A model generated the notes under the pieces. That model was not told where the DNA came from, did not search any database, and worked only from the letters and a program-made list of their open reading frames with translations. From Anolis carolinensis (taxonomy: Eukaryota), in the NCBI RefSeq assembly GCF_035594765.1, contig NC_085846.1, positions 12,945,190 through 13,009,189 of the forward strand: a stretch of 64,000 bases of DNA, written 5' to 3'. Both the position numbers and the translations under genes were made by a program. Positions within the stretch are counted from its first letter, which is position 1. Each line of letters starts with the position of its first letter. This document shows positions 769-21,563 of the stretch, piece after piece.

Positions 769-1108
769 GTAAGATTTCTTGCTTTGATATTGGGAAAACA
801 TTTCTGGCTTTCAGCTTTTTATGCAGCTGTTCAAAATCACAGAACACAAAATCAATTAATCACAAAGCCATTACCTAAAACATAAGGCAAGCTTCCCAGC
901 TCAAGGAAGCTGCAAAGTGTAGTTATTGGGGCCACTTCAGATGTATAATTTCTGTTTCTGGCCACCTCATTTCTTATGCCACTCACAGAGACTACAAACA
1001 GTATCTAGCAGTGGGCTCTGTTCTCACTGGAGAGAGAAAGAGATTGATTGCCAATCCTATTGCCCCATGTTCACCCCCAATCCCCCTTGTTTTGTTCATC
1101 ATGTGCAG

Positions 1109-3999
1109 GAAGCAATCCAGCTGGATGGGGAGATCTTCTTTGCCCTGCTCCGACGAGCATCCCCTATTGCCTACCGACACCTGAAAAGATACAAAATCGA
1201 TCCCATTTTGTATATGACAGAGTGGTTCATGTGCATCTTCTCCCGGACTTTACCCTGGTGCTCCGTGTTGCGTGTGTGGGACATGTTCTTCTGTGAAGGT
1301 GAGACTCATTCTTTCGTTATTCACTTAGCTGCTTGCCATCTTTACATTGAGCCACTTGGAATCAGTGGCATTCCACTGGATATTTTTTTGGTTTAATTTC
1401 TGTGCTCACACAACCTTCCCATGTTAATTACCCATTTCTCAGTCCTTCTCTTTGTGGTCATTTATGGCACTTGGCCTCTTCCCACTTATTCACCAATTCA
1501 TCCTTGTCTCTTCTCTCTAGGGGTGAAAATAATCTTCCGGGTTGGCCTAGTGTTGCTCCGGAATACACTGGGCTCAGTGGATAAGCTCCGCTCATGTCAG
1601 GGCATGTATGAGACGATGGAGAAGCTACGGAATCTGCCTGTCCAGACCATGCAAGAGGACTTCCTGGTTCATGAGGTAGGAACTTGTTTTGTCTCTCTTT
1701 AAAATATTGAGATTGACACAGCATAAGGCACATTGTGTGGGTTTCTCATTAGACAAAAATAACAATTTTAATCTAATATAAAATAATACAAATAAAATTA
1801 AAGCAGAGAACAAGGAATATGAATCTGACAATGAAATCTGCATTGGAGGTAAGTTATTCTGCACAAATAACTTACAAACAGTTATTCTGTCATACAAAAA
1901 AGTGGGGTAGGACAATACTAAAGATGGATTGAAAGTGATAAGAAATACCGAATTGAAATAAAAGACTTTTTCTTCTTGCAACAATTCAGATTTCCATCTT
2001 AGCCAAAACTATTCATGGTAGATAATCCAATATCTTCCATCAGATGTTGCTGACATGTTCTTGAGTTCTTAGTGGCAGCCACAAGTAGAAATCTGCGAGT
2101 GTATGTGTGCCTTTAAGGGAAAGCTTTGAATTTTTCAACTTTTTTACCTTGTTGCTATTAGTAAATATACTAGTATGAAAGATATATCACATTGGCCAGA
2201 TTTGTGTTCTGCATTCTTCATCCATATTTGTTCAGAAGCGCATGAAATCATAATCATTTTGTTTTAAATTGAAATACTCAACATTCTGAAGTCAAGTAAT
2301 TGAGTGAAGGGGATTTAATGGCTTACTGAATAACACTCATAAACACACAAATGATTACACTATGTAACAAAATTTAAAAAATTTAGTTGAATTAAAAACT
2401 ATAGTAAAATGTGCTGCAGGATGCCCACAAAAGTTTTTTGTAGTTTAATGAACTTTTTCCATGTTTTTATAATTGAACCAATTAGGAAATGATATTTATA
2501 ACCCAGGTACAAAAACTGTGTTACATAATGCTATGTTTAGTTTATTGATAGAAATGGCGGGGTTTTGTTTTTTTTGAAAACTCTCTTAGAGCAGGAGGGA
2601 ATGGCTGTGGCCCTTTAAACGTTTTTGGCCCACAGCATCCATCAAACATGGCCAACACCAATGAATGGTGAGAGATGCAGTCTTTCAACATCTGGAGGGC
2701 TACTGCTGTTTACTCCTATTCTAAGATCAGGCTTGATGGGCCTTTCTTGGTAATGGATGCCAAGGAGATTGGGGTAAAAGCCCATGTTATTCCTCAGTTT
2801 TTGTGTATAGCAAGGGATGTTTCAAGAATAGCAGCACACAGCACATTGGATGAAATGCTGTGGCTTTTTCATCTTTGCTTTTAATTTAATTTTTAAAGAA
2901 AACCAAAGCAGACTTAGGTGGGCTTCAGATTGTAATGGAGAATGTACACGTATGGGTGGGTTGCTGCTTGAATCTGTGCCTGTTCTTGATTTTCTGTTTT
3001 AAATTTATGTCTCTCTCACACACAATGGAGGTCGGGCTGCTTTTTTTCGCTTCAGAAGGTGTGTCCTGAGTTGGTATTGCCCTTGTTGATTAAGAGAACA
3101 ACACCCAAAACAAAACCAAAAAACCCACAAAAGGTTAGAGAATGAGGAACCCTGTGCAGCATGTAGTTTCAGGCTCAGTTTGTATGAGGAAGGGCTCCCG
3201 GTACATGCAAGAAGTGGTGGTGTGGATGTTTGGCTAGGGATGCCGTGTGACTGTCCTTCTCAACTCTCCTCTTGTTCCCCATTGTGGCCAGGTGATTAAT
3301 CTCCCAGTGACTGAAGCCTTGATAGAGCGAGAGAATGCCACCCAGTTGAAGAAATGGCGGGAGAACCGGGGTGAGCTCCAGTACAAGCCTTCCCGCCGTC
3401 TCCACGGCTCCCGAGCGATCCATGAGGAGAGGCACCGCATGAACCCTCCCTTGTCCGCCAGCGCCAGCCTCTTAAGCCTCACTGGCCTGAAGCAAAGGGT
3501 TTCTCTCAGTGGCACGAGCGGGCCCTCTTTCTCTCCAGCGCACTCTGTGGGCGGCTTGGCAGTGTCTGCGGCCCCAACCCCAGCGCCTCCTGCGGCCCAG
3601 AGCCAGGTGGTGGTATCGGAAGGCCTCCATCCTGCCTTGCCCTCCCCGACGGGGAACAACACGCCCTTGGGAGGCCCCAAGAAGGTAGGGAGTGGCAGCA
3701 GCAGCAAGGAGGGGAAGCGGAAAGAGAAGGAACGTGAGAAGCAGGAGAAGTTGGAAAAGGAGCGGCAAAAGCAAGAGAGGGAGCGCGAGAGGAAACTGCA
3801 AAAGGAACGGGAGAAGCAGGAGAAGGAGAAGGAAAAGAAGCAGCAGAAAGAACGAGCCAAAGAGGAAGCCAAGCTGAAGAAAGAGAGGAAGTTGTCCCTG
3901 AAGAAAAAAGAACCCAAGTCTGCCTCCCTGCCGCCCCCAGAAGAGGGAAAAGATGGGGAGAACCCCGGATCATCAGTGCTGCAAGACACATACTTTTGA
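1109..3999 (+). CDS. TBC1D10B: TBC1 domain family member 10B (Rab-GAP, EPI64B), 3' part; exons 1109-1298, 1521-1675, 3292-3999; upstream exons outside window
   Basis: Spliced translation [38 protein letters not shown]|[21 protein letters not shown]|[37 protein letters not shown], then an E/K/R/Q coiled coil and terminal QDTYF*, matches recalled TBC1D10B. Junctions are GT-AG with phases 0/1/0. The C-terminus is a PDZ-binding DxYF motif. Confidence 0.95.
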
Positions 4000-6900
4000 A
4001 TAGGGCTGGGGGAGAGGGGACGTTGTTCCCAGTGACTGCCTCCTGTCACCTAAGGACCAAGATGGCAGCTGCTCCCAGAGACATACGGTGGTAGGAGGGC
4101 CCAAAGGGCAGGCAGTGGTGTGCCAAGAGCTGCTTTGCACTGAAGCACCCATCTTAGGGCTACAATAGGTAGGAGGATAATTTACCTAGTGCACATATTT
4201 CCACCTACCTTTGTGTGCCTGAGGTGGATATGGCCCTCCCTCCCCTCCCCCCTTTAAGGAACCGGGCCAAAACAAAATGGCTGCTGTTCTCTGGCTGTCC
4301 CAGTGCAGAATTTGCCAAACCTGACAGGTGCAGCAGCACAGCCCTTCCACTTCCCGAAAGCTTGGAGTCTTAACCAAGGAGCTAATTGTAATATTAATAA
4401 TAACTCCCAACATGGGTCCTCTCAAGTACTGTATATAGAATAATCTCTCCTGACAAATATTTAACTACTCCAGGCTAGATACACCAGCTCTTCCCAGGAG
4501 ATTAGTTTTCAGAGCAAAGGATGGTCTTTCCTCCCCTCTGCTCTGACAAGTTAACAAATTATTCAGTTGTGGGTTGGATTCACCTATGTAATGCCACTGT
4601 GTTTTAATCCCCAGCACCATCCCAAAAGGCATATAAAATAAATCCCAATGAAGCCGCTTTCTATACAAAGACGCAGGAGGCTTCTCCCAGCATTGAGGGA
4701 ACGGTGCACCTTATGCAGCTTTCAGGGGCAAGGAGTGTGTCCATATGGGGATTGGGAGACAGCGGCTGGCTCTAATACCCACAGACTCAGCCATACAGTT
4801 GTTACTATGCAAATGTTTCTTAGAAGTGGTCAGGGAAAAGAAATTCCACTCTACTGGTGCCTAGAAGCATCTCAAGATTCGTGAGAAATAAGACTGGAGC
4901 AGTGGGTTTGGAGCCTCCCTCCCGTTGCTGGCAAACCATTGAGAGAGGCTTCTGTTCTTATTAAGAAAATTGATCTCTTCCCCTGCCCTACAGTATTGTC
5001 ATTTGGCAGAAACATTCCTGAGTGCAAAGGCAGGAGGTCATCTTTATTCTGTTGCTTGCAGAAAAGAGACAGCCATATTTCTTGGGAGCATCTATCACCA
5101 TGATGAAGGCAGTGATAAAACTGTTTCTGCCAAAGCTCCCTGTATAATAAGAACCAATTTAGAAATGTTTGCCCGTTGTTGTTAGTATGCATCTAGTCCT
5201 TCTTCTGTCCTTGCCCATCCCTTATGGGATATCAAGGGTACATCTCCATTACAAATTTAAACCAGTTGAGAAATCATTTTTAAAAAAATCTTCATGTGCT
5301 CAATCTGAGAATTCCTGGGATCTGTTTTGGGGAAGATGCTGAGAATGGCTCCTGAATTTTTGAGTCCCAGGCTTTCTTTACAGAATTTTCAGAGCTTCTT
5401 GAGCCATGACTGCCGAAACTGGTTGAGCAGTGGTTTCAGTTTGTTAATGTAGAATTACATTCCTAAATGGTGCATGCTTTATCCCCTTGCCCCTCATTGA
5501 AAAACAAACTGGTCCTTTTAAAATAACTGGAATGTATCTTCGCTTCTTTTTCTCCGTGGTACGCTGTGCGGCCACAAAAGGAGTCCCCTTTGCCTTTTTA
5601 TATTATCACACACTGGTATCAGCTTGTTCAGCCTTTGTGGGAGGACAGAATGGCTTCTTTCCTACATGGTTTAGGAGCATAATGGTACCAGCAGATTAAC
5701 TGGGGCTGTGGATCAAAAGTAGGAATCCTGTGCATGAAAAATATCTTAGGAAGCTGGCAACTGGGAGACTGAACTGTTTTGAGATCAAGTTAGGCTAGGG
5801 CTACAAATCTAGACTAACGTATGTTTGTAACTCTTTGTCTTTGCCCTTCAGCTTTCACCTTCTGCAGGCTCAGTTTCTCCACCTTGGGTCACATTTCCTG
5901 CTATTGTGAATGAAGCAGTTTCAGAATTTGGCTTCCCACAGCACACCTGTCCCAAATGGTGGCTTTTTCTAAAGTCCTCAGTCCCATCCATGATCCAGCA
6001 AAAAAGATCAAGTAGCCCATCCTCATCTCTGTACATAACTGTTCTCTATAACACATATATTATATATATGTTTCAGTATTGTAATTATGTATACAGATAC
6101 TTGGGATTTTTTTTTTGATCTTGTGCTTTTATTTAATGGGACAGACACTGGAAATTAGGAATTCATTTTCTCCCCTTGCCTTTTATTATTATTTTTTAGG
6201 TTTTTTTTTTTTACCACCACTCCTAATCAGGAAGAGCAGAAAATTAGAAGTTTACAGCCGATATATTCTTGCTGTCCTACTTGTTAATATTTTCTTTGTC
6301 GTTTGTGCCTCATTCTCATTGGATTCCCTGTTTCCTGAATTGCTTTGTTTAAAAATGTTAACAAAACAAAATGAAAGCAACTGTCTTTGTTCCTCGAGGA
6401 TGGGTTGGACTCTCATATTGGATTGGGGTGTCCAGATCAACAAAAAAAGAATTGGAGGAGGCTTGTCAACAGTGAGTGTGGTTTGGAGAAGGAACACTTT
6501 ATCCACAGGTTAGGATAAGCCTTTGAACAAACCTTTCCCCAGCCTGATGTCTTCCAGATGCATTGGACTCCCAAGTCTTATCAGCCCTAGCCAATAGGCC
6601 TAGCACATTTGGAGAAGGACACCAGGATTGGAATGCCTGCTAAAATATTGGCTTTGAGTCGGTTGTTGAGAGAAGGCTGTTTGTTGAATAGTTCTAGCCA
6701 TTTGATCTGGCATATTACTTCATTCTTACATTTATTTTGTCACAGATGCCGATCTGCAAGTTTATGGTGTTAGTTTATCCTGCAAGTTAGGTCAGCACAA
6801 GAGAGACCTTGGCTGATGAGACCAATCCCAAAAAATGGACCTGAACTTTGCTCTCAGACACACACCCCAACCACACATCCATGGTTGTAACACTTGATCA

Positions 6901-7978
6901 CCATGCACATTCCCTGGTTCCTGTTGATTTTTGTTTAAGTTTAATTGGCTTGCATTAGTGTTCTGTTGAGTGACCACAGGTACTGCTAAAAGTAACGTAA
7001 CACAGCAAGCCTTAATCTGCCAGTTTGGAAACTGCAGCTCTTTAGATGCAAGACTACAAATCACATCAACTTTGTCGATAGTGAGGCGTAATGGGAGCTG
7101 TGGTCTAAGAACACCTAGAGAGCTGTAATTCAGTACTGCCTTCCAGGTATTCAGTTTTGTTATTGGATGCCCACAACTTGCTCTTGGCTACTGACATTGA
7201 GAGATGGAAATACATGTACACAAGTGAGAAACAGGCCTTTTAAAACTGGGTTGCCTATATTTAAGCTGTAAGGAGAGCTTTGGTGAGGGCGATAGCCTGC
7301 TTCTCCATTGCTGCTATTCTCACAATTCCCTCGGTTTGTGTTTCTGGATATTCACCAGGTACACTTACAACCTTATGAGACGCAGTCTTCTCTGCATCTA
7401 CTCCCCGCTTCTCTGTGTTGTTGGAACGGGAGTCCAACAGAACCCATGACATGACACAGTCCAACTTCTGGCAGGTCTCCGTAGGGCTTCGTTTCAGCAG
7501 CATGGAGAAACAGAGCCCAGAGTGGTTTTGGAGGAGTTGGGTAACAATCAGCTCTTCACTGAAGAAAAAGAGAACGAAGCAGGAAAGGATGGGAAACAAT
7601 GCGGGATTGGAGGCCATCCCAGAAGACCGGGAAAGATGATAGGGAACAAAGGATGATGGTTCCCCCTGCACTCTCCCTCTTTCCCCCTGCCCGTCTGATG
7701 AGGTCATTAGTGATTCCTAACTGGGTTCCCACTATGTAGTAGGTAGTGTAGTTCCCTGTAATATCAGCTCACTTGGCCGATGCAGTATGGAAGCAGAGGT
7801 TGTGATTGACCAGAGTGGGATGACTGCATAACAGGATTTGGGGACCTGCCACAGCAAGCAACCTCCCCCCCCCCCCCCCCAAAAAAAAAATATTTCGCAG
7901 GAAGAAACTGATCTTTTTCAACTAAATATGACTGGTGCAGAAACACACATACATTTCAAGCTTTCTTCAAAATACAAA

Positions 7979-7984
7979 TTTATT
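7979..7984 (-). terminator. Polyadenylation signal of the PHETA-like gene
   Basis: TTTATT on + (AATAAA on -), about 115 nt past the stop codon. Confidence 0.6.
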
Positions 7985-8097
7985 CATTATTTTGTATCAA
8001 TGTACATAGCCTAGCTCTCTGTGTGCCCCTCTTTCCACAAACTTCATATATATTTGAGTTTTGCCCAAAACTTAAACGTTTGGAATTGTTTATTCCT

Positions 8098-8739
8098 CTA
8101 CCCGAAATCTATCAAGCTCTCTCCCTCCAGGGCTTCTGGAACCCATTCCAGTTGCTGCTGACTTCTCCTTTCTTCTTGCCAGATGTGTCTCACTTTCACA
8201 ATATCCTTCCCAAATTCCAGATGGAGTTGAGTAAAATCCATGTTGTGGGATGCCATTTCCAGCTTCGGTACTGAAGGAGGTAGATGAAGGTCCATTACAC
8301 GTTTTGGGTTTCCCTCTAATTTGGGCTGTTCCTGACTCTTCAGCCTGCGATACTGACTCTCTAGGTCATCAACCAAGGCTCGGAGGTACCCAAACCCTGC
8401 TGCACTAATAGCTCTCACCCAACCTTCCATTGTCTCTTGGTTTCCTGCTGCCATCTTATAGGAGCGGCTACCAGGTAATCCATTTGGATAGGAAATTTCA
8501 AAGGTATATGGTTCAGATGCGGATTCCTGGAGTTCCACAGTGCAGCCTTCTAGGACAATAAGCTGAGGAGGGCCACGGTCTCCATGTCGCTCCCGGCAGA
8601 AGAGAAGGTTGCCCCAGAGTTCACACCAACACTGGTGGTAGGAGGCACTGCGAATGCTCTTCTTATACAGAAGACCCTGGCATTCTGGGACATGTCCGAA
8701 GGGGAAAGAATGAATCGTGGCAGACATACGGAGCTTCAT
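8098..8739 (-). CDS. Sesquipedalian/PHETA (FAM109/IPIP27)-family PH-domain endocytic adaptor, 213 aa, single coding exon; probable distinct paralog
   Basis: MKL start; PH domain GLLYKK..YHQCWCELWGNLLF..IVLEGCTVEL..MEGWVRAISAAGFGYLR (cf. PHETA1 GFLYKK..GNMLFY..IILEGCTVEL..MEGWVKALSRASFDYLR); short coiled coil; F&H motif FTQLHLEFGKDI. Splice acceptor 12 nt before the ATG (exon starts 8751). AATAAA on the minus strand at 7979-7984. Confidence 0.9.
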   Translation of the reverse strand: MKLRMSATIHSFPFGHVPECQGLLYKKSIRSASYHQCWCELWGNLLFCRERHGDRGPPQLIVLEGCTVELQESASEPYTFEISYPNGLPGSRSYKMAAGNQETMEGWVRAISAAGFGYLRALVDDLESQYRRLKSQEQPKLEGNPKRVMDLHLPPSVPKLEMASHNMDFTQLHLEFGKDIVKVRHIWQEERRSQQQLEWVPEALEGESLIDFG

Positions 8740-9797
8740 GTTGGATGGATCCTAAAATAAGGAAATAGACAATGGGTGATAAAACAAGCCAAACAACCAT
8801 GTACTAGGTCTCTGGTGTTCATGGTTCATCTCCAGATGACAAGGTACAAATTTTCCCATTTATTTGGAGGTAAGGTCAATTCTAGGTAAGAAAAGTTGAC
8901 CTCCATATCAACAACTAGGAGCAACTTGCTACAACCTAAAGGCCTTTTGATTTGTTGCTACAATTTGCAACAAGTTTCAAGTTTCTCTTGAAAGATGTAT
9001 GGATTTACTTCATTTTCTCCTTCTCTTCCAATTGTGGCACAAGGGCTCATCCACATACTAGCTGAAAGCATATATGCCAAAATAAAAGGAGCTTACCATC
9101 CTTAGCAAATGTGGGGAATAGTCCCCTCATTCCGTTTTGATTTACAAACAGCCTCTCTAGATAGAATTTCTCAATTTCCAAACAGCAAAATATATGAGTT
9201 TGAATGACAAGCTGCAAGCAATAATGGGTTGGTAGTTAATATATATTGCTTATTGACCCCAATACAGTGAGGATTCATAGAAACCGTCCGCAGATCAGGT
9301 TTTGGTCTGGAAACCTCAGCCTGGGATGATCCAGCCCTACTATGGATTAGAATAGAAAAAAAAACCGATGGAGGGATCAAAGGAGGAAATACAAATCAGT
9401 ACAGAAAATGAGAAGTGAAAGAATACATCATGGCGATGGGATGGAAGAAAAATAGGGCAGAGGTAAGAGATGAAAATAACAGAAATGAGTGAAGCAAGAG
9501 CAAAACTGAAATATATGAGGGTGGGAGAAAGCAGGAGATGAGGAACAATGTTAGATATGGCTCATCCATTTGGAAGTGGGATTTTAAAAACATCAAGCAA
9601 AAATACTTGAGTAAAATAGAAGAACCAAATGGAAATAAAGTTATGGATTGAGCAAACTAATAGTGACATGCAGGCATAAATAGATATGAGTCTTAAATAT
9701 AAACTTTTAAAGAAGTTGCAGACATAAAAGAAGGGTGATGTTTAGGAAGGAGAGTGTTTGAAATCGGGAGATGAATGAGAAGACAAATATGTGGGTG

Positions 9798-10041
9798 CTT
9801 TTTATTGTGTCAAAAGTGACTTGAGAACATACTGCCAGTCACTTCTGGTGTGAGAAAATTAGTTGTCTACAGAAACATTGCCCAAAGGATGCTGGAATGT
9901 ATTAGCTGGGAGGATTTTCTTATGTCCCCGCAAGCTAGAGCTGACAGACAGGGGTTCACCCCGTCTCGCAGATTCAAACCGGCAACCTTCAGGTCAGCAG
10001 TTCAGCCAGCACAAGGGTTTAACCCATTGTGCCACCATTGT
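9798..10041 (-). mobile_element. tRNA-derived SINE (AnolisSINE2-like), reverse copy
   Basis: Reverse complement resembles the SINE at 23207-23472, with an A/B-box head and a ..ttctcaagtc..gacac(A)n tail. Confidence 0.65.
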
Positions 10042-10103
10042 GTGGATGATGGGTGAAAAGAGTTTTCGGGAATGAAAACATGGAAATTTGATCTTAAAAT
10101 GTA

Positions 10104-10437
10104 CAGTAGAGTCTCACTTATCCAAGCTTCACTTATCCAAGGTTCTGTATTATCCAAGGCAGTCTGCCTTTTAGTAGTCATTGTTTTTGTAGTAAATGTT
10201 AAAATGTTTTGGTGCTAAATTCGTAAATATAGTAATTACTACATAATATTACTGTGTATTGAACTGCTTTTTCTGTCAATTTCTTGTAAAACATGATGTT
10301 TGGGTGCTTAATTTGTGAAATCATAATGTAATTTTATGTTTAGTAGGCTTTTTTCTTAATCTCTCCTTATTATCCAAGATTTTCGCTTATCCAATGTTCT
10401 GCCGGCCTGTTTATCTTGGATAAGTGAGGCTCTACTG
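10104..10437. mobile_element. Tc1/mariner(pogo)-type MITE
   Basis: TIRs CAGTAGAGTCTCACTTATCCAA / TTGGATAAGTGAGGCTCTACTG with TA target duplications; further copies at 28897, 35590 and 47840. Confidence 0.85.
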
Positions 10438-11987
10438 TAGTTAAATTGAGAGAATGAGACATAGAAAAGAAGTTCCCTTTTGAAACTATTTGAAGTAAGT
10501 TAATGAGAGCAGGGCCTCTGCCCATTTTTGAGCCAGTTTTTGAGGATTTTTGAGACACTGAATGCCCCTTACCTTTGGAAGTCAGCTCTTCCCTTAAGAC
10601 TTTCCTCCAGGTCACTCCACTTCCTTCATTGCTCCACAAGAATAGTTTCCAAGGTGAAGAGGAGGGGCTTGCATTTACCTGCCTTTCCCCATCCAGGTAG
10701 TATTAGAAGTCACTTGATCCCGTGTTCCAGGAAGGCTGGAGGGTAAAGCAATCACGCACTTTGATGACAGCGTCTTGACTGTTTCTCTCACCCTCTCCAA
10801 AAGCAGGAAGAACAGGCAGCTCTACAGAAAAGGAAGTAAAAAACCCTAAATGAGTAGTGGATTTTTTAAAAAATGAAGTGAAAGTTTTCTCTGGTCCTAA
10901 AAAGCCCTATTTCAAGAAACAGATGAAGCAGTTGTAAGAACAAATTGTTGTGGGAAACGTAGGGCAAAAGAAGCTTGAGTTGCTGCTGGACCCTATAAAA
11001 TCGTTACAATTTGTCTGAACCCGTCTCATGTATCATATATTTAGACTGTTGTCAGTTAATAACAGCTTGGTGATTTTCAGGGGTTGGGACAATTTGATGG
11101 TGGTATTGTGTAGTTTTAGGAGGGAGAGATGTCCTGTTCTATTGCTTTTCTGAGGCTTCTGCGGGTAGATTCTTACAAACTTTAAAAGAAAGAAGAAAAC
11201 ATAAAATACATTGTTCCTGTCTATGGAGTTTCCATTGAACCTTTATAATTAAACACTGCTGCTTCTAAGGTCTAGATATATTTTCTGTATGTGCCACTGC
11301 TTTTAATGCCGCTCCCAAAGCATCTGCGGCCACATCTTGTGGCAGTAAACTCTTTAGCTGTGGCTGCATCTTATGGCAATAACATTTAAAAACCAAACAG
11401 ATGCCATAAACACATGCCATAAAATAAGCGTGGGGCCTTGGGTCAACAAGGTTTTAAGCATGAAGATATAAGTCCTCCTTGATGGCTAAATTTGAAGCAA
11501 TGCTGTTCAGGTTTAGTGTCTGGGAAACTGAAATGCTCCAAAGCCTCAAACTGTCCACCTGGGGGCTGGGATGGCACACCTTTGTTTGCAGATTTTTCAG
11601 TGTACAAAAGCTTTATTGCATCATACAACTATTCAAAATTCTGTGTATAAAGTTACCTTCAGGCTATGTGTTTCAGGGATATGCCTCCCTAGACAACTTT
11701 CAGTCATGAGTTTTGATTTACATTCTGTTGCTAGTATCTGCCAGTTCTGTATCTGTGTTTGGTGCAAGTTTTAAAAAATATTTTGTGCTTTTATCTGTCT
11801 TTTATTTTATATATTTTGTGCTCATATGTTTTTGACTGTTGTACCCCGCCTTGAGAGTTGGGTAATAAATAAAATTTATTAGTATATTATTAATATATAA
11901 GAAACATACATTAATGTTGTGTATAGCTATGTCTAAATATTGAAGTAATGTCACATTGAAGATGGAGGCAGTGTGTTTACTGCTGCT

Positions 11988-12018
<31 letters not shown>

Positions 12019-12147
12019 CAGCATTTATATTCCGCCCTTCTCACCCCGAAGGGGACTCAGGGCGGATCACATTACACATATAGGCAAACATTCAATGCCT
12101 TTTTAACATAGAACAAAGACAAGACAAACATAGGCTTTAGAGACTTA

Positions 12148-12487
12148 GGGGCCATGATGGCGCAATGGGTTAAACCTTTGCACTGTTGAATCTGCTGATC
12201 TAAAGGTTGGCAGTGCAAAGCCGTGGGTTGGGGTGAGCTCCCGTTGTTAGCCCTAGCTCCTGCCAACCTAGCAATTCAAAAACATACAAATGTGAGTAGA
12301 TCAATAGGTACCGCTTTGGCAGGAAGGTAATAAAGGTGCCCATACAGCCATGCCATCAACAAGGCCAGGAGGTGTCTACGGACAACAGGCTCCTTGGCTT
12401 GGAAATGGAATAAGAGCACGTCCCCATGACCAGAGTTGAGCACCACCTCCAGAAAGCCAGAGATGAAAGGGGAAGCCTTCACCTTTG
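12148..12487 (+). mobile_element. Sauria SINE
   Basis: tRNA-like head, core gttagccctagctcctgccaacctagca..aaatgtgagtagatcaataggtacc and an ACCTTT-type tail. Confidence 0.8.
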
Positions 12488-12608
12488 CTCTGTGTATTTG
12501 TATGTCATTGTTATTCCGCATTGAATGTTTGTCTATCTGTGTTTGTGGTAATCTGCTGAGACCCCTCGGGGAGATAAAACAGAATATAAATAAAATGTAT
12601 TATTATTG

Positions 12609-12898
12609 TGTTGTTGAAGGCTTTCGTGGCTGGAATCATTGAGTTGTGCATTTTCTGGGCTGTATGGCCATGTTCCAGAAGCATTCTCTCCTGACGTTTC
12701 GCCCACATCTGTGGCAGGCAAACTCAGAGGTTTTGAGGTATATTGGAAACATTAAGCAGTAAAAACTATAAACCTTCCTTGCTTAGTCTTCCAGTATACA
12801 TTACAACCTCTGAGGATGCCTACCATAGATGTGGGCGAAACGTCAGGAGAGAATGCTTCTGGAACATGGCCACACAGCCTGGAAAATGCACAACTCAC
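12609..12898. mobile_element. Penelope-like element remnant, inverted pLTR pair
   Basis: About 95-bp inverted arms (gagttgtgcattttctgggctgtatggccatgttccagaagcattctctcctgacgtttcgccc.. and its reverse complement), each carrying a hammerhead motif typical of Penelope pLTRs. A related fragment lies at 46634-46710. Confidence 0.75.
12807..12847 (+). ncRNA. Minimal type I hammerhead ribozyme, Penelope-associated
   Basis: ccu-CUGAGGA-U-GCCUAC(cauagau)GUGGGC-GAAAC-GUC-agg: complete core, 6-bp stem II, palindromic minimal stem III (ACGU), stem I ccu/agg. Predicted cut after C12844. Confidence 0.7.
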
Positions 12899-12930
12899 TG
12901 TATTATTATTATTACTACTATTATTATTCA

Positions 12931-13373
12931 GGGCAGACCCTCTATCCCAGGATCTGATCCCAGGTTTTCTGCTTTAAACTAGATTATGAGTCTGCACTGC
13001 CAAATCTGGGATAAACAGAAAACCTGGGATCAGATCCTGGGATATAGGCCCTGTCTGGAAGAGCCCTAAGGCCCCTTCCACATTGCGCCTATATCCCTGA
13101 ATCTGAACCCAGATTACTTGCTTATCCCAGATTATCTGGTAGTGTGGACACATATAATCCAGTTTAAATCAGATAATCTTGGTTCAGATCCTGTGGTAGA
13201 GGGCAGTGTAAGAGGGCCCTCAGGGCCCTTCCACATAGCCATATAACCCAGAATATCACGGCAGAAAATCTCACTATATCTGCTTTGAACTGGGTTATCT
13301 GAGTCCACACTGCCATATATCCCAGTTCAAAGCAGATAATGTGGGATTTTATTCAGCTACATGGTAGGGGACC
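12931..13373. mobile_element. Tandem array of three palindromic PIF/Harbinger-like MITEs
   Basis: Units 12931-13066, 13070-13219 and 13223-13373 have GGGCCCTTCCA-like termini separated by TAA/TCA. A solo copy lies at about 20300-20449; related internal palindromes at about 30770-31000, 32070-32225 and 37105-37225. Confidence 0.65.
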
Positions 13374-15520: not shown

Positions 15521-17326
15521 AAGAACCCATAAGAGTCATCTAGCCCAGCCATGAGCAAACTTGGGCCCTTCAGGTATTTAGGACTTCAACTCCCACAATT
15601 CCTAACAGTCTACTGATTTCCACCACACTATTGTTGTTGATATTATTATTATTTCTACTTCATACCAGCCTCTTCTCGTGGATTGAGGTGGAGAATGAAA
15701 ACATATTAAAATACGACATGTGCCGTTGGTTATAAAACACACAACACACACACCAGTTAAAACATCAGTTTATAAAGAACATATACAACCAGTTTATATT
15801 CAATCTGGACAAAGGTGGGAGGATTGCACAAGTCTGCCTGGGGAAAAAACTTTTAAAAAAATATGGTAGCTCTTCCAAATTTATTTTTAGGTGCTGAAAA
15901 CCCCGATGAAATTGCTGTGCCACACGTAGTTCTTTCACATATTTGCTAGTTTTATCAATTCAGTTGTTACTCTGTTTTGATCACATGCTAATGTCCCAGC
16001 GTGATTTCCTTTAGTGCTTTTGAATGAATGGGCTGTTGTTTTTCAAAGCAGTGGATTAAAGTGTTTTGAAAACCTATGGCAGGATCTGCAGTGCCACACA
16101 ATGCAGTTTGGAACTACATTATATGGTCAGTGCAGACCCATATAATGCCATTGAACTGCATTGATTTTATTTATTTACTATATTTATACTCCTCTCTTCT
16201 CATGTCGAAGGGGACTCAGCATGGCTTCCAAGCTGTCAATATTCAATGTCATACAAGCGACAAACAGAAACAATCAATACAAATATTAAAATCATTAAGT
16301 GTTCCAAAATTGATACATTAAAATCAGCTAATAAAATCACACAAATCCAAAGTCATAGTCCAAGAGCCATTCCAATGCTTGCTACATTGATCTGCATTAT
16401 ATGGCAGCATAGATAGGATATATGAGGTAACTTTATAAACTCCCCCTTAATGTTTAAACTTCACTCCCCAAAGAAGTCATACTCAGTCACATATTGCAAA
16501 ATGATAGCAAAGCAAGTTGTAACAAAAACTAAATATGATGGTGCAAATATGAGGCTATTTTTGGATTTACCAAAGCAAATTTCTATATTAGTGTACATTA
16601 AAAAAGGTTTTATGACTTTCAATTTTGCAGGGCAGTTTTTTTTGGAAGGGATGCCCTCACATTAATTTGTTCGTGTCATTTAGTTTAGAAGATATCTAGT
16701 GGGTTTGTTGCAGATGTGTTAATTGAGACAGATTGTTATGAAAGGTGGTAATATATTGTAAGAGAAGAAAAAACAACCAGAAATAGTGGTTTATATTTTT
16801 TTGTATTCTTCCCCGCTCCAGCCTTTACTAGCCACAATCAATTTCCAAAGTAAACAAAAAAATTCTACCTTTAAGAAAGTGTTTTGCAAACATTCAGAAA
16901 CTGCATGTCTATATTTCTTTCTCAGAACCTGAATTTTAATTAAGTCTTTTATTATGTGAGTGTTTTCAAGCAAGATGATGCAGTAGAGTATGCAATGATT
17001 TTTGTTAATTTGCTTTATTTCTCTGTGTCTATTTCACTGTGGGATTATTTCAGTGTTTCAGTTGCATTATAGTGTAGGATATGCATTTATGCAGAGGGAC
17101 GAGAAATGTGTATAAACACCGCTATCCCACGTGTCCATCTGTACCACAAAGATGGCACCAGCAGCTGCTTGTTTACAAACGTTGCCTTGGCTTGTGTTTG
17201 GTGAAGATAAGGACCTTATCGCCATGTTGCTTTCCAGAAAGCTGTCCAGTCTGAAGACATTGGTTTTGGGTGCATAAAGGGCTCTCTATCTTCCTTTGAG
17301 TCTATTTTGCTTTCCATAGGTCCATT

Positions 17327-20300
17327 ATGTCAAAACGCAAGGTAACCTTTGAAGACCAAGGTGATGAAGATGAAGAGGAAATGAGTTTGCCAAAGAAGAA
17401 GGTATGACAGAAGAAAACCCCTTTTCCCTCCCTTAATATCTAATTTTTTTTAAAAAATAGTGAGACATAGTGGTGTTAACATTGGACTATGAAGACCGGG
17501 GTTCAGTTCCACATGAAAATCCACTGGGTGACAAATTCTCAGACCCCCAAACTCCCATGATAAGTTTGCTCTAAGTTAGAAACAACTTGAAGACAAACCA
17601 CAACAATAATAACCTTGCTAAGTCTGGATCTTTGTAGTCAAAACATCTGGAAGGACCAGGATGCTGGTAGTTATATTCTGTCACTTGGTATTTAGGTGAC
17701 AAAGCTGAGTGAAATCTAGCTAATATTTTCACATCATGTTAACGTTAGGAAGCTGTATTTATTTCATTGAAAATGGCCCACCACATGAATGATTTTAAAA
17801 GATAGGAGGAGGAAAGTATTGATAGTTGTCTATTACTCCTAGTATCAGAGATGATGACTCCCACTGCCAATTGTTGTGTACACAAGTTGGAATTATTGGT
17901 CTTCTTGCACTCATGTTTTGGGATGTGGCTTTCAATAGGCATTGTGAGAAAGACTAGATGAGCCTTTTTGGTTCCCATATTGTTCTTACAACAGAGGTAA
18001 ACTGCTAAGTGTTGAGAATGACAAAATAACAGAGGCACTTTAGTCTTTCTGAAAATGCATCATTTCCTCATTATTTTTTCTCTCCTGATCAGCTTGTAGA
18101 ACCTGCCATTGGTGGGCCAGGTAGTCGTTTTAAGGGCAAACACTCATTAGACAGTGATGAGGAAGATGACGAAGAGGAGGAAGGACGAGGCAGTAAATAT
18201 GACATCTTGGCATCAGATGATGTGGAGGGTATGTATGAGACTGTATTTGATTCAATGGGATTAAATATTCTAAAATGCTGTATAAATAAGAGGGGCTGTT
18301 TGGATTTCAGATGCCACCAGCGTGGATAAGACTGCCCTTAAGGAATCTGGGTGACTGAATAGCTATTTTAGTACTTCAAAATAACTGCAAAGATTAAGTG
18401 TTCAAAATCAAATGGCGTTTGTTTTGTCAGCAATTCTTAAAATAGGGGTAGCCATTATTGGCAACGGCTTTATCAAACATCCCCCCCCTTATTTCACTCT
18501 TGTAGGGCAGGAATCTGCCACTATTGACTACGAAGATGGTGTTCGGATCACCCCATTCAATTTGCAGGAAGAGATGGAAGAAGGCCATTTCGATTCAGAG
18601 GGCAACTACTTCTTGAAGAAAGAGGCAATGATTCGTGACAACTGGTTGGACAACATAGACTGGGTAAGACCATCTCTATGGCTTCCATGTAAAGTAGTCA
18701 GTACAAATATAGCTATGATCTCACATATGTCTAATTAAAGATGTGAAGACTGGGGGAAACCCCAGAAGAAATCAGAAAAAAGGTCCCTATTGTTAAACCT
18801 TTTTTTAAAAAGAAAATGTGAAAAACATTAGTATTAGTATCATAAAAAATATTTAAGACAAGCTACTCATGTATTTGCTGCTCCAAAATCATTTCTAAAA
18901 ACCGTGTAGGATGAATATATTTATTGAAGCCTGTGTATAATTTTAAACAATTACAATTCCTGGTCTTGGTTTCCTTTTCCCAGTTCTTTTTATGGGAATG
19001 AGTATGTTATGTTATATTGGGTGCAAATGTTTTCATAAAGAATATACAGCCCAATAAAAAAATTGATTTCTAGCTCTGTTCCTGGGGTTATTTGGGATGA
19101 TGATTCAGAAAATTGTATAGACTGCATCAACTCTAGTTTCTTAAATATGGTTATCGTCATTTTTTATGGGCAAACAGATGGCAACTGATAGATGGCGTAT
19201 GTTCTGTATCTCAGAAACTGAAGCTGATAGAGGGAAACCGGTGCCGTTTTTGGAATTAGTAGGTTAAGTATACCCAGAAAGAGAGCTAACATCTGAGGCA
19301 CCTAAGTGTATGTTGCCCTGTGATATCATTACTTAAATATCCACTAGAATTCTTTGTCCTGACCATAAACACATTTTAATGGCACAGTATTTTGCTTACC
19401 ATAGTTCCCATCTTTCCCTTTAGGTCAAAATAAAAGAACAGCCTCCTGGTCGGAAGAAACCACCACTGGATTCTGGGGAAGACAACGGCGAAGGTGACGA
19501 AGATGACCTTGAAATTGGCCAGACACCTTTAGGGAAGAAGGAGCTATTAGAAGGGATGGTGGATTTGGTGCAACCTGGCGAGACGGTGGCCAGAGCCATT
19601 CAAAGGCTTGGAGATAGAGGTGGGCCCAAGAACAGTGGGCGTCAGCAGAAGCCCTGGAGCCGCCTCAAGGCAAACGAAGCAGAGCAAGCTGAGCAAGGGG
19701 AGCCCCAGAAGATTGGGTCGCCAGAGCGGAAAGAGCAGCTGGAGCGCCTGTCTGGGCTGGCTGACCAAATGGTGGCTCGGGGCGTGTACGAGATCTACCA
19801 GGAGACCCGGGAGAAGCTGGCGCTGAGGCTCCGGGCATTGGAGCATCCTCATGTAGCACCTTCCGGTGCTGAGCCGGAGCTTGATATGTTTGCCGAAGAT
19901 ATTGATGAAGCAAAACTGGGGGAGAAGACGCCGGCAGGTGAGAGAGAGAGTCTTTCAGGCATGTAGAACACTATGGAATTGGGATCACTTGAAGTGGAAA
20001 CACAGAGAATCACATGAAATAATTCATTGCTGAGTCATACCACTGCCTGAGGGAAGTTGTGTGATGTCAAGATTTTCTTTGTGCTTAGGAAGTAAAGGGG
20101 TCATGGAAAAGGTCTGGTATAATGTTCAACAACGGAACTCATTGCACTGCTTCAGAGTGTTGTGGAGACTCCTTCTTTGGATGCTTTTAAACAGAAGCCA
20201 AGTGGCCATCTGTTAGGGGTATTTTGATTGTGCTTTTCCTATATGGCAGGGAGTTGGACTGGATGGCCCATATGGTCACTCCCAACTCTATGATTCTAAG

Positions 20301-21563
20301 GGCCCTTCCATGCTGCCCTTTATCCCAGGATCTGATCCCAGATTATTTGCTTTAAACTGGAATATATGAGTCCCCACTGTCAAATAACCTTGGATAAACA
20401 GATAATCTGGAATCAGATCCTGAGATAAAGGGGCAGTGTGAAAGGGCCCTGTGTTGATCAAGAAAACATCCAAATATCAGCTTCCTTGTGTTGCTGTTCT
20501 TAGTTGTTTAGATTTTTATGGAATTGACATATGACATTTTTTTTCTTATGCATTTTTATTATTATTTTAACATACACATTTTAGACAACATCAAGCGATG
20601 ATCAGATTGTACAAGAACAAACAAGTACACATGTTTACACAACTACCAGAAGACAAAGGGTTAAAGTAAAATGCATTGAAACACTAAATGCTACACCTAT
20701 AACACTAAGTCAAACAGTGAAATGTTACTTCCAATTAGTATACTAACTCTGTCTTCTCTTTTTTAAAATAATAATTCTGACATATGACCTATTTTAATGT
20801 TCTCCAACAGCAGGAAGCGAGGCTCAGCAGCAGGATGATGATGACGACAACTCTCTCTCTGAGGTGATGTGGGAATATAAATGGGAAAACACAAACTCAT
20901 CCGAACTCTATGGCCCATTTAGCAGCTCACAGATGCAGGTAAGAGAATGCAGATGGAAGAAACAGATTTCTGTTAATGTGTGTGTGTGTACATATACGCG
21001 TACATTTTTTGCCCTGTTTTTACTGTCCTTGAACAAGTCAAACTGTCAGCTTTGGAGAAAGGCAAAGGCTTTCTCCCCTGGGGGAGAAGAGCGGTATACA
21101 AATTAAATAAATAAATACCCATCTGAAAAAAATTGCAAAAAACTATGTGATAGTCTATAACTTATAAAACTATAAGTCAGACTTAGAAGATGCACAACAA
21201 CTTTTTGGAACTTCATAATAATGGATTGTTGATGTAGTTGTAACTCTGGGATCTGGATGGTCATGGGTACAGAACTGGTGCAAAAACAAACTTCCTTGGA
21301 ATCAGCTTGGCATTGATTGCTTTAATATAACATTTGTTGGTTACATTAGTTCCTTCCTTGAGTGCTTCTTGGGTCTATTTGCTTGCTTGCTTCCTCACTC
21401 TGGCGTCAGTTTCCTTTCTATTTTTACATTCTCTTCTCCTGTATCCCTCCAGGACTGGGTGTCCCAGGGCTATTTCCCTGACGGGGTTTACTGCCGGAAA
21501 GTGGAAAATTCTGAGGGCCAGTTCTACAACTCCAAGCGCATTGACTTCGACCTCTACACGTGA
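17327..21563 (+). CDS. CD2BP2: CD2 antigen cytoplasmic tail-binding protein 2 (U5-52K, GYF domain), 373 aa; exons 17327-17401, 18093-18228, 18506-18663, 19424-19937, 20811-20938, 21453-21563
   Basis: MSKRKVTF (RVxF), [74 protein letters not shown], and GYF domain [46 protein letters not shown]. All junctions are GT-AG and in phase. Confidence 0.97.

What the first reader, a model, noticed from the sequence alone, without database searches (positions are those of the whole stretch)
8098..8751. Candidate third sesquipedalian/PHETA paralog between TBC1D10B and CD2BP2
Seen: an intact 213-aa ORF with the family layout (one coding exon, PH domain, coiled coil, F&H motif FTQLHLEFG), a splice acceptor 12 nt before the ATG and a poly(A) signal. 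Known: PHETA1/2 (IPIP27A/B) bind OCRL and INPP5B through the F&H motif; the human genes lie on chr12 and chr22, and to my recollection human TBC1D10B and CD2BP2 are neighbours with no PHETA gene between them. Inference: this is a third paralog, possibly an ohnolog, retained in squamates and lost in mammals. The human divergent lncRNA recalled at this site (CD2BP2-DT; verify) could be its remnant.
Basis: partly seen in the sequence, partly recalled or inferred. Interest (0 to 1): 0.8.

Follow-up and report, generated by a model that had tools for sequence, protein, structure and literature searches.

The report
Third PHETA endocytic adaptor gene
This lizard gene is a real, expressed member of an old third branch of the PHETA (OCRL-binding adaptor) family; the branch also holds cattle genes and, by its published primers, the zebrafish gene called pheta2, and it is separate from mammalian PHETA1/2.

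Summary
Window 8098-8739 (minus strand) is an intact 213-aa ORF with a PH domain, a following helix, an F&H motif and a C-terminal LIDFG tail. Contigs from four studies cover it. Three show a GT..AG intron (8752-10572) ending 12 nt before the ATG, and they stop just after an AATAAA. dN/dS among squamates is 0.15-0.32.

It is a third paralogue. A careful ML tree puts it in a 43-sequence clade (support 100/97), separate from PHETA1+PHETA2 (100/99). Forcing the reptile genes into PHETA1/2 is rejected (AU p=0.022).

The clade is not limited to squamates or missing from mammals. It includes sharks, coelacanth, lungfish, ray-finned fishes, amphibians, turtles, ruminants, hippopotamus and moles. Cattle carry it in the same CD2BP2 / gene / TBC1D10B arrangement. 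No bird, crocodilian, primate or rodent protein turned up, but those genomes were not searched.

The published zebrafish pheta2 RT-PCR primers encode two signatures of this clade. So zebrafish "pheta2" is most likely an orthologue of this gene, not of human PHETA2.

The gene is annotated as "sesquipedalian-1-like". I found no paper treating it as a separate paralogue. OCRL and clathrin binding are inferred from motifs only.

The parts
8098..8739 (-). Coding sequence, 213 codons plus the TAG stop (8100-8098), all in one exon
   Evidence: ORF; 93% identity to the Anolis sagrei 'sesquipedalian-1-like' protein, E=2e-132; dN/dS 0.15-0.32 among squamates
7962..8751 (-). Terminal exon 2: 12-nt leader, coding sequence and a 3' UTR of about 135 nt
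   Evidence: contigs from four runs in four studies cover 7962/7966/7999/8010 up to 8750-8764
8752..10572 (-). Intron of 1821 nt, GT..AG on the minus strand
   Evidence: joint 8750(+1) to 10572(+1), ends CT..AC on the plus strand, seen in runs X4 (240 nt on the short side), X8 and X13
10573..10811 (-). Exon 1, a non-coding 5' UTR. This is the minimum extent; contigs of run X8 suggest it may reach about 11053
   Evidence: record 12 of X4 covers 10572-10811; X8 records cover 10572-10660, 10681-10844 and 10880-11053; in-frame stop four codons before the donor
8398..8685 (-). PH domain, residues 19-114
   Evidence: PF00169, E=8e-14; seven strands plus a helix, pLDDT about 85
8332..8391 (-). Helix after the PH domain, residues 117-136. 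This is the family's 'coiled-coil' region
   Evidence: helix 117-136; conserved Y118, L119, R120, L126, E127 and Q129. Coiled-coil formation was not tested
8200..8238 (-). F&H motif, residues 168-180 (F169, H173 and F176 at motif positions 2, 6 and 9)
   Evidence: F169, H173 and G177 invariant; motif present in 43 of 43 clade members; motif definition from PMC6743453
8101..8115 (-). C-terminal LIDFG, a clathrin-box-like tail
   Evidence: L[ILVM]x[ILFW] within the last 8 residues in 33 of 43 clade members and in none of 23 PHETA1/2 proteins. Clathrin binding was not tested
7979..7984 (-). Distal AATAAA poly(A) signal, probably the one used
   Evidence: sequence; contigs end at 7962 and 7966, which is 13-17 nt beyond the signal
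8089..8094 (-). Proximal AATAAA, 4 nt after the stop codon. The contigs read through it
1058..3999 (+). Last exons of the neighbouring RabGAP-TBC gene (TBC1D10B by position), convergent with the PH gene
   Evidence: ORF translations; matches to the TBC genes of Podarcis, a turtle and A. sagrei; PF00566, E=7e-19, at 1058-1318
17293..21563 (+). Neighbouring CD2BP2 (GYF-domain) gene, divergent from the PH gene
   Evidence: exons 17293-17404, 18090-18284, 18481-18723 and 19424-19918 match the Podarcis or turtle gene; GYF domain PF02213 at 20864-20956 and 21444-21563

Best explanation
The ORF is the coding exon of a working two-exon gene. The gene belongs to a third, ancient gnathostome branch of the PHETA / sesquipedalian / IPIP27 family, which NCBI pipelines label 'sesquipedalian-1-like'. 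Its conserved home is the CD2BP2 / TBC1D10B / MYLPF neighbourhood.

**Shown here**
- It is transcribed, spliced and has a defined 3' end.
- It is under purifying selection.
- Its clade is separate from PHETA1+PHETA2.
- Its clade runs from sharks to lizards and includes some laurasiatherian mammals.
- Cattle and five reptiles share the same gene arrangement.
- The published zebrafish pheta2 primers encode this clade's N-terminal and C-terminal signatures.

**Inferred mechanism**
- Like Ses1/2, the protein is probably an endocytic adaptor.
- The PH domain and the following helix would place it on membranes. Whether it pairs with itself was not tested.
- The F&H helix (F169, H173, F176) would dock on the ASH-RhoGAP surface of the 5-phosphatases OCRL and INPP5B.
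- It lacks the PPPxPPRR site through which PHETA1 recruits PACSIN2.
- It ends instead in a conserved [DE]LIDx tail that looks like a clathrin box. So it may couple the phosphatase to clathrin rather than to PACSIN2. This last step is the least certain.
For: **Gene model**
- Intact ORF with a PH domain.
- Spliced contigs in three studies, and coverage in four.
- An upstream in-frame stop fixes the start codon.

**Selection**
- dN/dS is 0.20 (NG86) against A. sagrei and 0.15-0.32 across squamate pairs.

**Family placement**
- In the profile search, the squamate and turtle orthologues score 264-360 bits and PHETA1 at most 248.
- In the exhaustive search of representatives, the score drops from 359 to 181 bits after the squamate cluster.
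- Careful ML tree of 78 proteins: the third clade has UFBoot/SH-aLRT 100/97, PHETA1+2 has 100/99, and squamates plus turtles have 100/97.
- The AU test rejects holding the squamate and turtle genes with PHETA1/2: log-likelihood difference 30.7, p=0.022.
- Clade members were named.

**Synteny**
- GYF / PH / TBC in Podarcis, Elgaria, Rhineura and Bos chromosome 25.
- A TBC gene lies downstream in A. sagrei and a turtle.
- A 161-residue EF-hand gene (not identified further) lies next to the gene in a shark, and a MYLPF-like skeletal myosin light chain in a teleost.

**Motifs**
- F&H motif in 43/43 clade members.
- PPxPPRR in 0/43, against 18/21 PHETA1.
- C-terminal L[ILVM]x[ILFW] in 33/43, against 0/23 PHETA1/2.

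**Zebrafish**
- The pheta2 primers in PMC7272357 translate to THYLSCTS and EEDLIDLG-stop.
- The paper reports that pheta2 lacks synteny with human PHETA1/2 and lacks PPPxPPRR.
Against: - No binding data exist for any member of this clade apart from the genetics of zebrafish pheta2 mutants.
- The F&H helix and the tail have low model confidence (pLDDT 30-50).
- The tail in this Anolis ends in G, not the D/E of the classical clathrin box. Mammals and a few squamates have lost or changed the tail.
- The AU p-value of 0.022 is significant but not overwhelming.
- PHETA2 is represented in the tree only by platypus and one frog.
- The mammalian and frog branches of the clade are very long.
- The runs are labelled 'RNA?' by guess. 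The spliced joint is what shows they hold RNA.
- The zebrafish link rests on 16 residues encoded by primers, not on the whole protein.
Confidence: 0.8

Rival explanations
1. It is the lizard orthologue of PHETA1 or of mammalian PHETA2 that moved to a new site and evolved fast.
For: NCBI names it 'sesquipedalian-1-like'. It shares the PH + helix + F&H layout and about 40% identity with PHETA1. Like human PHETA2, it lacks PPPxPPRR.
Against: - Anolis carolinensis and A. sagrei each have a separate PHETA1 (P0080, P0048) that sits in the squamate PHETA1 clade.
- Platypus and Ascaphus 'sesquipedalian-2' group with PHETA1, not with this gene, at support 100/99.
- The AU test rejects the union, p=0.022.
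- The site is shared with cattle, and sharks and teleosts carry clade members in what looks like the same neighbourhood. So the position is ancestral, not a recent move.
Confidence: 0.05
2. It is a recent squamate retrocopy or lineage-specific duplicate. The single coding exon might suggest this.
For: The whole coding sequence lies in one exon.
Against: - Orthologues at the same locus occur in turtles and cattle.
- Clade members occur in sharks and bony fishes.
- The gene has its own 5' intron.
- Shark and caecilian members also have single-exon coding sequences.
Confidence: 0.02
3. It is a transcribed relic with no protein function.
For: - Several lineages appear to have lost the gene: no bird, crocodilian, primate or rodent protein was found.
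- Mammalian copies are on a very long branch.
- The reference has Cys at a site that is otherwise Arg.
Against: - The ORF is intact in about 30 squamate species and several turtles.
- dN/dS is 0.15-0.32.
- The F&H motif is present in 43/43 members.
- All four transcript sets carry the conserved Arg codon.
Confidence: 0.03
4. It belongs to the third clade but has been rewired. It would act mainly through its tail or other partners, and its F&H helix would no longer bind OCRL or INPP5B.
For: - Residues between the fixed F, H and hydrophobic positions differ from PHETA1.
- The PACSIN2 site is absent.
- The SPKLW linker motif of fish and sharks is lost in amniotes.
Against: - Motif positions 2, 6 and 9, which the peptide-array study calls critical, are kept in every member across more than 400 million years.
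- Zebrafish pheta1/pheta2 double mutants share renal endocytic defects with OCRL deficiency (abstract of PMC7272357).
Confidence: 0.1

Closest known systems
Zebrafish pheta2 (zgc:153733), studied in PMC7272357
   Same: Its RT-PCR primers encode THYLSCTS near the N-terminus and EEDLIDLG-stop at the C-terminus. It has no PPPxPPRR site and no synteny with human PHETA1/2. It is most likely the orthologue of the window gene.
   Different: The fish genes have introns inside the coding sequence (exon 3 was targeted in zebrafish; the gar and Morone loci are spliced). They also carry an SPKLW linker motif that amniotes lack. The full zebrafish protein was not available to place in the tree.
PHETA1 / Ses1 / IPIP27A (FAM109A)
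   Same: N-terminal PH domain, following helix and C-terminal F&H motif. About 40% identity over the PH half.
   Different: It is a separate clade (100/99 against 100/97). PHETA1 has the PPPxPPRR PACSIN2 site (18/21 against 0/43) and no terminal LIDx tail (0/21). PHETA1 lies beside SH2B3, while this gene lies between CD2BP2 and TBC1D10B. The protein is also shorter: 213 aa against about 250-295.
Mammalian PHETA2 / Ses2 / IPIP27B (FAM109B)
   Same: Same domain layout, and PHETA2 is reported to lack PPPxPPRR.
   Different: Platypus PHETA2 groups with PHETA1. Human PHETA2 lies beside NAGA, SMDT1 and NDUFA6. It has no terminal LIDx tail (0/2).
Cattle 'sesquipedalian-1-like' on chromosome 25 (P0272)
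   Same: Same clade and the identical GYF / PH / TBC arrangement. The coding sequence is a single exon and the F&H motif is kept.
   Different: Only 34-35% identical to the Anolis proteins. It sits on a very long branch and the terminal LIDx tail has been replaced.

Membership tests
PHETA / sesquipedalian / IPIP27 family | N-terminal PH domain | tested here: met
   PF00169 at residues 19-114, E=8e-14. The model shows a PH fold with pLDDT about 85.
PHETA / sesquipedalian / IPIP27 family | Helical (coiled-coil) segment after the PH domain | tested here: inconclusive
   The model has a helix at 117-136 with conserved residues. Coiled-coil or dimer formation was not tested.
PHETA / sesquipedalian / IPIP27 family | C-terminal 13-residue F&H motif with F at position 2, H at position 6 and a bulky hydrophobic at position 9 (PMC6743453) | tested here: met
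   F169, H173 and F176 are present. F and H are invariant in alignments A1-A3, and the motif occurs in 43/43 clade members.
PHETA / sesquipedalian / IPIP27 family | Binds the ASH-RhoGAP domain of OCRL/INPP5B | not testable with these tools
   This needs a pull-down or ITC experiment.
PHETA / sesquipedalian / IPIP27 family | Whole-length sequence homology to family members | tested here: met
   All significant hits are sesquipedalian proteins.
PHETA1 orthologue group | Falls inside the PHETA1 clade | tested here: not met
   The clades are separate at 100/99 and 100/97. AU p=0.022.
PHETA1 orthologue group | PPPxPPRR PACSIN2-binding motif | tested here: not met
   Found in 0/43 members of the third clade against 18/21 PHETA1.
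PHETA1 orthologue group | Lies beside SH2B3/ATXN2 | tested here: not met
   The window's flanks are a TBC gene and a GYF gene. Anolis PHETA1 lies on another chromosome record.
Mammalian PHETA2 orthologue group | Groups with mammalian PHETA2 in a tree | tested here: not met
   Platypus sesquipedalian-2 sits with PHETA1. Only one mammalian PHETA2 was sampled.
Mammalian PHETA2 orthologue group | Lies beside NAGA/SMDT1/NDUFA6 | tested here: not met
   The flanks are TBC1D10B-like and CD2BP2.
Third clade ('sesquipedalian-1-like'; zebrafish pheta2 group) | Monophyly with shark, fish, amphibian, turtle and cattle members | tested here: met
   UFBoot/SH-aLRT 100/97 for 43 rows.
Third clade ('sesquipedalian-1-like'; zebrafish pheta2 group) | Position in the CD2BP2 / TBC1D10B / MYLPF neighbourhood | tested here: met
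   Window; Podarcis, Elgaria, Rhineura and Bos; a turtle and A. sagrei. A MYLPF-like gene is adjacent in Morone and an unidentified EF-hand gene in a shark. The caecilian and gar loci had no neighbour within 10 kb.
Third clade ('sesquipedalian-1-like'; zebrafish pheta2 group) | C-terminal [DE]LIDx tail | tested here: met
   The window protein ends in ESLIDFG. The tail occurs in 33/43 clade members and 0/23 PHETA1/2.
Clathrin-box proteins (L-hydrophobic-x-hydrophobic-[DE], recalled consensus) | Exact consensus and binding to the clathrin heavy-chain terminal domain | tested here: inconclusive
   LIDFG has G where the consensus has D/E. Turtle (LIDLE), Podarcis (LIDFD) and Python (LIHFE) fit it. 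Binding cannot be tested here.

The most novel reading that the evidence does not exclude
Jawed vertebrates began with three PHETA genes. The third (this one) pairs the OCRL-binding F&H helix with a terminal clathrin-box-like tail in place of the PACSIN2 site. It sits in the region that corresponds, from my own recollection of the human map, to human 16p11.2, a paralogon of the PHETA1 region at 12q24. It has been lost repeatedly: in birds, in crocodilians and in most mammals, apparently including primates and rodents. On this reading zebrafish 'pheta2' is its orthologue, so zebrafish would have no true PHETA2. The published double knockout would then model PHETA1 plus a gene that patients may not possess.
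Probability: 0.5. Interest if true: 0.6.

Novelty: new member of a known kind. Interest (0 to 1): 0.45.

Why it matters
PHETA1/2 are the adaptors that connect the Lowe-syndrome phosphatase OCRL to endosomal recycling. The only whole-animal study of them used zebrafish pheta1 and pheta2.

If zebrafish pheta2 belongs to a third branch with no identified human counterpart, the orthology behind that disease model needs restating. The redundancy seen in fish may then not carry over to people.

The branch also offers a natural variant of the adaptor. It keeps the OCRL-binding helix but swaps the PACSIN2 site for a clathrin-box-like tail. That makes a testable case of how one phosphatase is sent to different endocytic stations.

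For genome annotation, 'sesquipedalian-1-like' hides a distinct orthologue group that deserves its own name.

Tried and rejected
- **PDB sequence search:** only generic PH domains at E>=0.002, nothing specific.
- **CpG-island scan of 4-20 kb for a promoter:** nothing stood out.
- **Latimeria member look-up:** not on record.
- **Caecilian, gar and Anolis PHETA1 loci:** no neighbouring gene within 10 kb, so they say nothing about synteny.
- **Zebrafish pheta2 guide-RNA target translated in several frames:** no match among the session's proteins. The RT-PCR primers gave the answer instead.
- **A MYLPF paper, searched for zebrafish chromosome positions:** nothing found.
- **Paper search for PHETA3, 'sesquipedalian-1-like' and FAM109C:** zero occurrences.
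- **Earlier-findings search by words:** only the sister note on the tail motif.
- **Whether squamates also have a PHETA2:** could not be settled. No squamate 'sesquipedalian-2' appeared in the truncated hit lists, and no tool here searches lizard genomes.
- **Considered and rejected:** a recent retrocopy, a translocated PHETA1 or PHETA2, and a dead ORF (see the rival explanations).
Full report
**1. The observation**

The minus strand of window 8098-8739 holds an ATG-to-TAG ORF of 213 codons. Pfam finds a PH domain at residues 19-114 (E=8e-14).

An AlphaFold model built on 19 orthologues shows four parts:
- a confident PH fold at residues 20-112;
- a helix at 117-136;
- a disordered linker;
- a low-confidence helix at 169-197 and a disordered tail.

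Residues 168-180 carry F169, H173 and F176. These fall at positions 2, 6 and 9 of the 13-residue F&H motif. A peptide-array study of Ses1 found F and H at positions 2 and 6 obligatory, and conservation defines a bulky hydrophobic at position 9 (PMC6743453).

Contigs of public runs from four studies cover 7962-8751. Three of them join 8751 to 10573 and skip 1821 nt, with GT..AG on the minus strand. One contig carries 240 nt of the upstream exon.

The runs are only guessed to be RNA. A canonical spliced joint seen in three studies shows that they hold mRNA of this gene.

Instead I translated exon 1 by reference, in the frame fixed by the 12-nt leader. It has a stop four codons before the junction, so ATG 8739 is the start.

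Two AATAAA hexamers follow the stop codon, at 8094-8089 and 7984-7979. The longest contigs end at 7962-7966, just beyond the second one.

**2. Surroundings**

- Plus-strand exons at 1058-3999 encode the end of a RabGAP-TBC protein.
- Plus-strand exons from about 17293 to 21563 encode CD2BP2, including both halves of its GYF domain.

From my own recollection, that fits the gene order of human 16p11.2.

**3. What it is**

The closest protein is Anolis sagrei 'sesquipedalian-1-like' at 93% identity. About 30 squamates and several turtles follow at 50-73% identity. PHETA1 proteins reach only about 40%.

Two searches show the separation:
- A profile search puts the squamate and turtle orthologues at 264-360 bits and PHETA1 at 248 or below.
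- The exhaustive HMMER search of 1.84 billion representatives drops from 359 to 181 bits after the squamate cluster.

Many of the next hits are short proteins that also end in LIDLG, LIDFG or LIDLS. Naming them changed the picture. They are 'sesquipedalian-1(-like)' proteins from these groups:
- sharks;
- coelacanth and lungfish;
- bichir, paddlefish, gar and many teleosts;
- caecilians, salamanders and a frog;
- more turtles;
- mammals: ruminants, hippopotamus and two moles.

A careful IQ-TREE analysis used 78 proteins, the LG+C20 PMSF model and an invertebrate outgroup. It gave:

| Clade | Rows | UFBoot/SH-aLRT |
|---|---|---|
| Third clade, including the window protein | 43 | 100/97 |
| PHETA1 plus platypus and Ascaphus 'sesquipedalian-2' | 23 | 100/99 |
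| Squamates + turtles within the third clade | 14 | 100/97 |
| Amniotes + the frog within the third clade | 20 | 99/94 |

Holding the squamate and turtle genes together with PHETA1/2 costs 30.7 log-likelihood units and is rejected (AU p=0.022).

**4. Synteny**

| Species | Arrangement found |
|---|---|
| Podarcis | GYF / PH / TBC |
| Elgaria | GYF / PH / TBC |
| Rhineura | GYF / PH / TBC |
| Cattle, chromosome 25 | GYF / PH / TBC |
| Turtle (Platysternon) | TBC gene downstream, convergent |
| A. sagrei | TBC gene downstream, convergent |
| Horn shark | 161-residue EF-hand gene adjacent |
| Striped bass (Morone) | Gene between zinc-finger genes and an EF-hand gene |

An exon of the striped-bass EF-hand gene best matches skeletal myosin regulatory light chain, which is MYLPF-like. 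From my own recollection, MYLPF is the next gene after TBC1D10B in human.

The locus is therefore ancestral, not a squamate novelty. "Lost in mammals" is wrong as a general statement.

No bird, crocodilian, primate or rodent member appeared among the named hits or the representatives. This shows absence from predicted proteins only. Those genomes were not searched, and human sequence was not used.

**5. Constraint**

Pairwise dN/dS on codon alignments:
- 0.20 (NG86) or 0.30 (ML) between the window and A. sagrei;
- 0.15-0.32 among five squamates.

Comparisons with the turtle and with cattle are saturated at synonymous sites.

**6. Motif wiring**

| Motif | Third clade | PHETA1 | PHETA1/2 combined |
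|---|---|---|---|
| F&H motif | 43/43 | 19/21 | 21/23 |
| PPxPPRR (PACSIN2 site) | 0/43 | 18/21 | 19/23 |
| L[ILVM]x[ILFW] in the last eight residues | 33/43 | 0/21 | 0/23 |

- Mammals have replaced the tail.
- An SPKLW linker motif occurs in fishes, sharks and salamanders but not in amniotes.
- The tail resembles a clathrin box (consensus recalled from memory). In this Anolis it ends in G, not D/E.
- A sister note of this scan (s1-536049) made the same observation. I add the conservation counts, but binding remains untested.

**7. The zebrafish link**

Ates et al. (PMC7272357) reported only two zebrafish homologues:
- pheta1 lies beside sh2b3 and has the PPPxPPRR site.
- pheta2 (zgc:153733, chromosome 3) "lacked obvious synteny" with human PHETA1 or PHETA2. 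It lacks PPPxPPRR, is more divergent and has at least three exons.

Their pheta2 RT-PCR primers translate to THYLSCTS and, on the reverse strand, EEDLIDLG-stop.
- HYLSC near the N-terminus occurs in 13 proteins;
- a DLIDLG end occurs in 14 proteins;
- every one of these that was placed in the trees falls in the third clade, and none is a PHETA1 or PHETA2.

Cypriniform, characiform and catfish members of the clade are in the tree. So zebrafish 'pheta2' is most likely the orthologue of the window gene, not of human PHETA2. I did not have the full zebrafish protein, so this rests on 16 encoded residues plus the paper's own remarks.

**8. How it probably works**

By homology it is an endocytic adaptor.
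- The PH domain and the following helix would bring it to membranes.
- The F&H helix would dock on the ASH-RhoGAP surface of OCRL and INPP5B.
- It lacks the PACSIN2 site and has a conserved terminal LIDx motif instead, so its second partner may be clathrin.

What is shown: the gene model, expression, constraint, phylogeny, synteny and motif conservation. What is inferred: both binding steps.

**9. Known or new**

The gene models already exist in public annotation under an uninformative name, and the fish orthologue has been studied as 'pheta2'. A full-text search found no paper using PHETA3, 'sesquipedalian-1-like' or FAM109C.

I rate it a new member (orthologue group) of a known family. The origin is ancient, before sharks and bony vertebrates split. 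From my own recollection, the regions holding PHETA1 (12q24, beside SH2B3/ATXN2) and this gene (16p11.2-like, near SH2B1/ATXN2L in human) are paralogous. That would fit an ohnologue, but I could not test it.

**10. Limits**

- PHETA2 is thinly sampled.
- The mammalian and frog branches are long.
- Hit lists were truncated at 120-150 rows.
- Whether squamates also keep a PHETA2 is open.
- The N run at 44358-44491 was left alone.

Noticed in passing
window 8682: All four transcript sets read G where the window has A. On the coding strand this turns codon 20 from TGC (Cys) to CGC (Arg). Arg is the residue found in at least 90% of orthologues. The reference individual may carry a rare allele, or this may be an assembly error. 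The change is the wrong type for A-to-I editing on this strand.
   Followed up: partly
window 9801-10600, 12001-12400, 12601-13000: Contig depths in the thousands in all four runs. These are high-copy, transcribed repeats inside the intron and upstream of exon 1. Many false joints arise there.
   Followed up: no
window 5909-6115: A block between the 3' ends of the TBC gene and the PH gene is conserved with Podarcis (68% at the translated level) and partly with a turtle. It is probably a conserved 3' UTR element of TBC1D10B.
   Followed up: no
window 10573-11052 (minus strand) and P0002: The N-terminal extension of the predicted Sceloporus 'isoform X2' (LLCLFFLLLER...) matches the translation of the window's non-coding exon 1, which has stops here. 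The extension is probably an annotation artefact, and exon 1 is conserved among iguanians.
   Followed up: partly
L007, L006, L004 versus L008, L009: The coding sequence is a single exon in a shark, a caecilian, reptiles and cattle. It is split by introns in gar and striped bass, and in zebrafish by the paper's account. Either ray-finned fishes gained introns or the other lineages lost them.
   Followed up: no
P0315 and P0368 (Scyliorhinus torazame): Two third-clade copies lie on the same 147-Mb scaffold, and one is flagged low quality. They are each other's closest relatives in the tree. This may be a local duplication in catsharks.
   Followed up: no
Third-clade proteins of fishes, sharks and salamanders (e.g. 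P0125, P0134, P0149): A conserved linker motif, K-[RK]-S-P-K-L-W-x-K-R, occurs in 16 of 43 members and is absent from amniotes and from PHETA1/2. Its function is unknown.
   Followed up: no
P0159 (platypus) and P0343 (Ascaphus), both 'sesquipedalian-2': Both branch at the base of the PHETA1 clade, outside shark PHETA1. PHETA2 may therefore be old as well, or this may be a long-branch effect. Sampling is too thin to decide.
   Followed up: no
window 7864-7890: A run of about 14 C followed by about 10 A lies some 75 nt beyond the mapped 3' end of the transcript. The reads tool flagged 7851-7898 as a place where reads seem cut.
   Followed up: no
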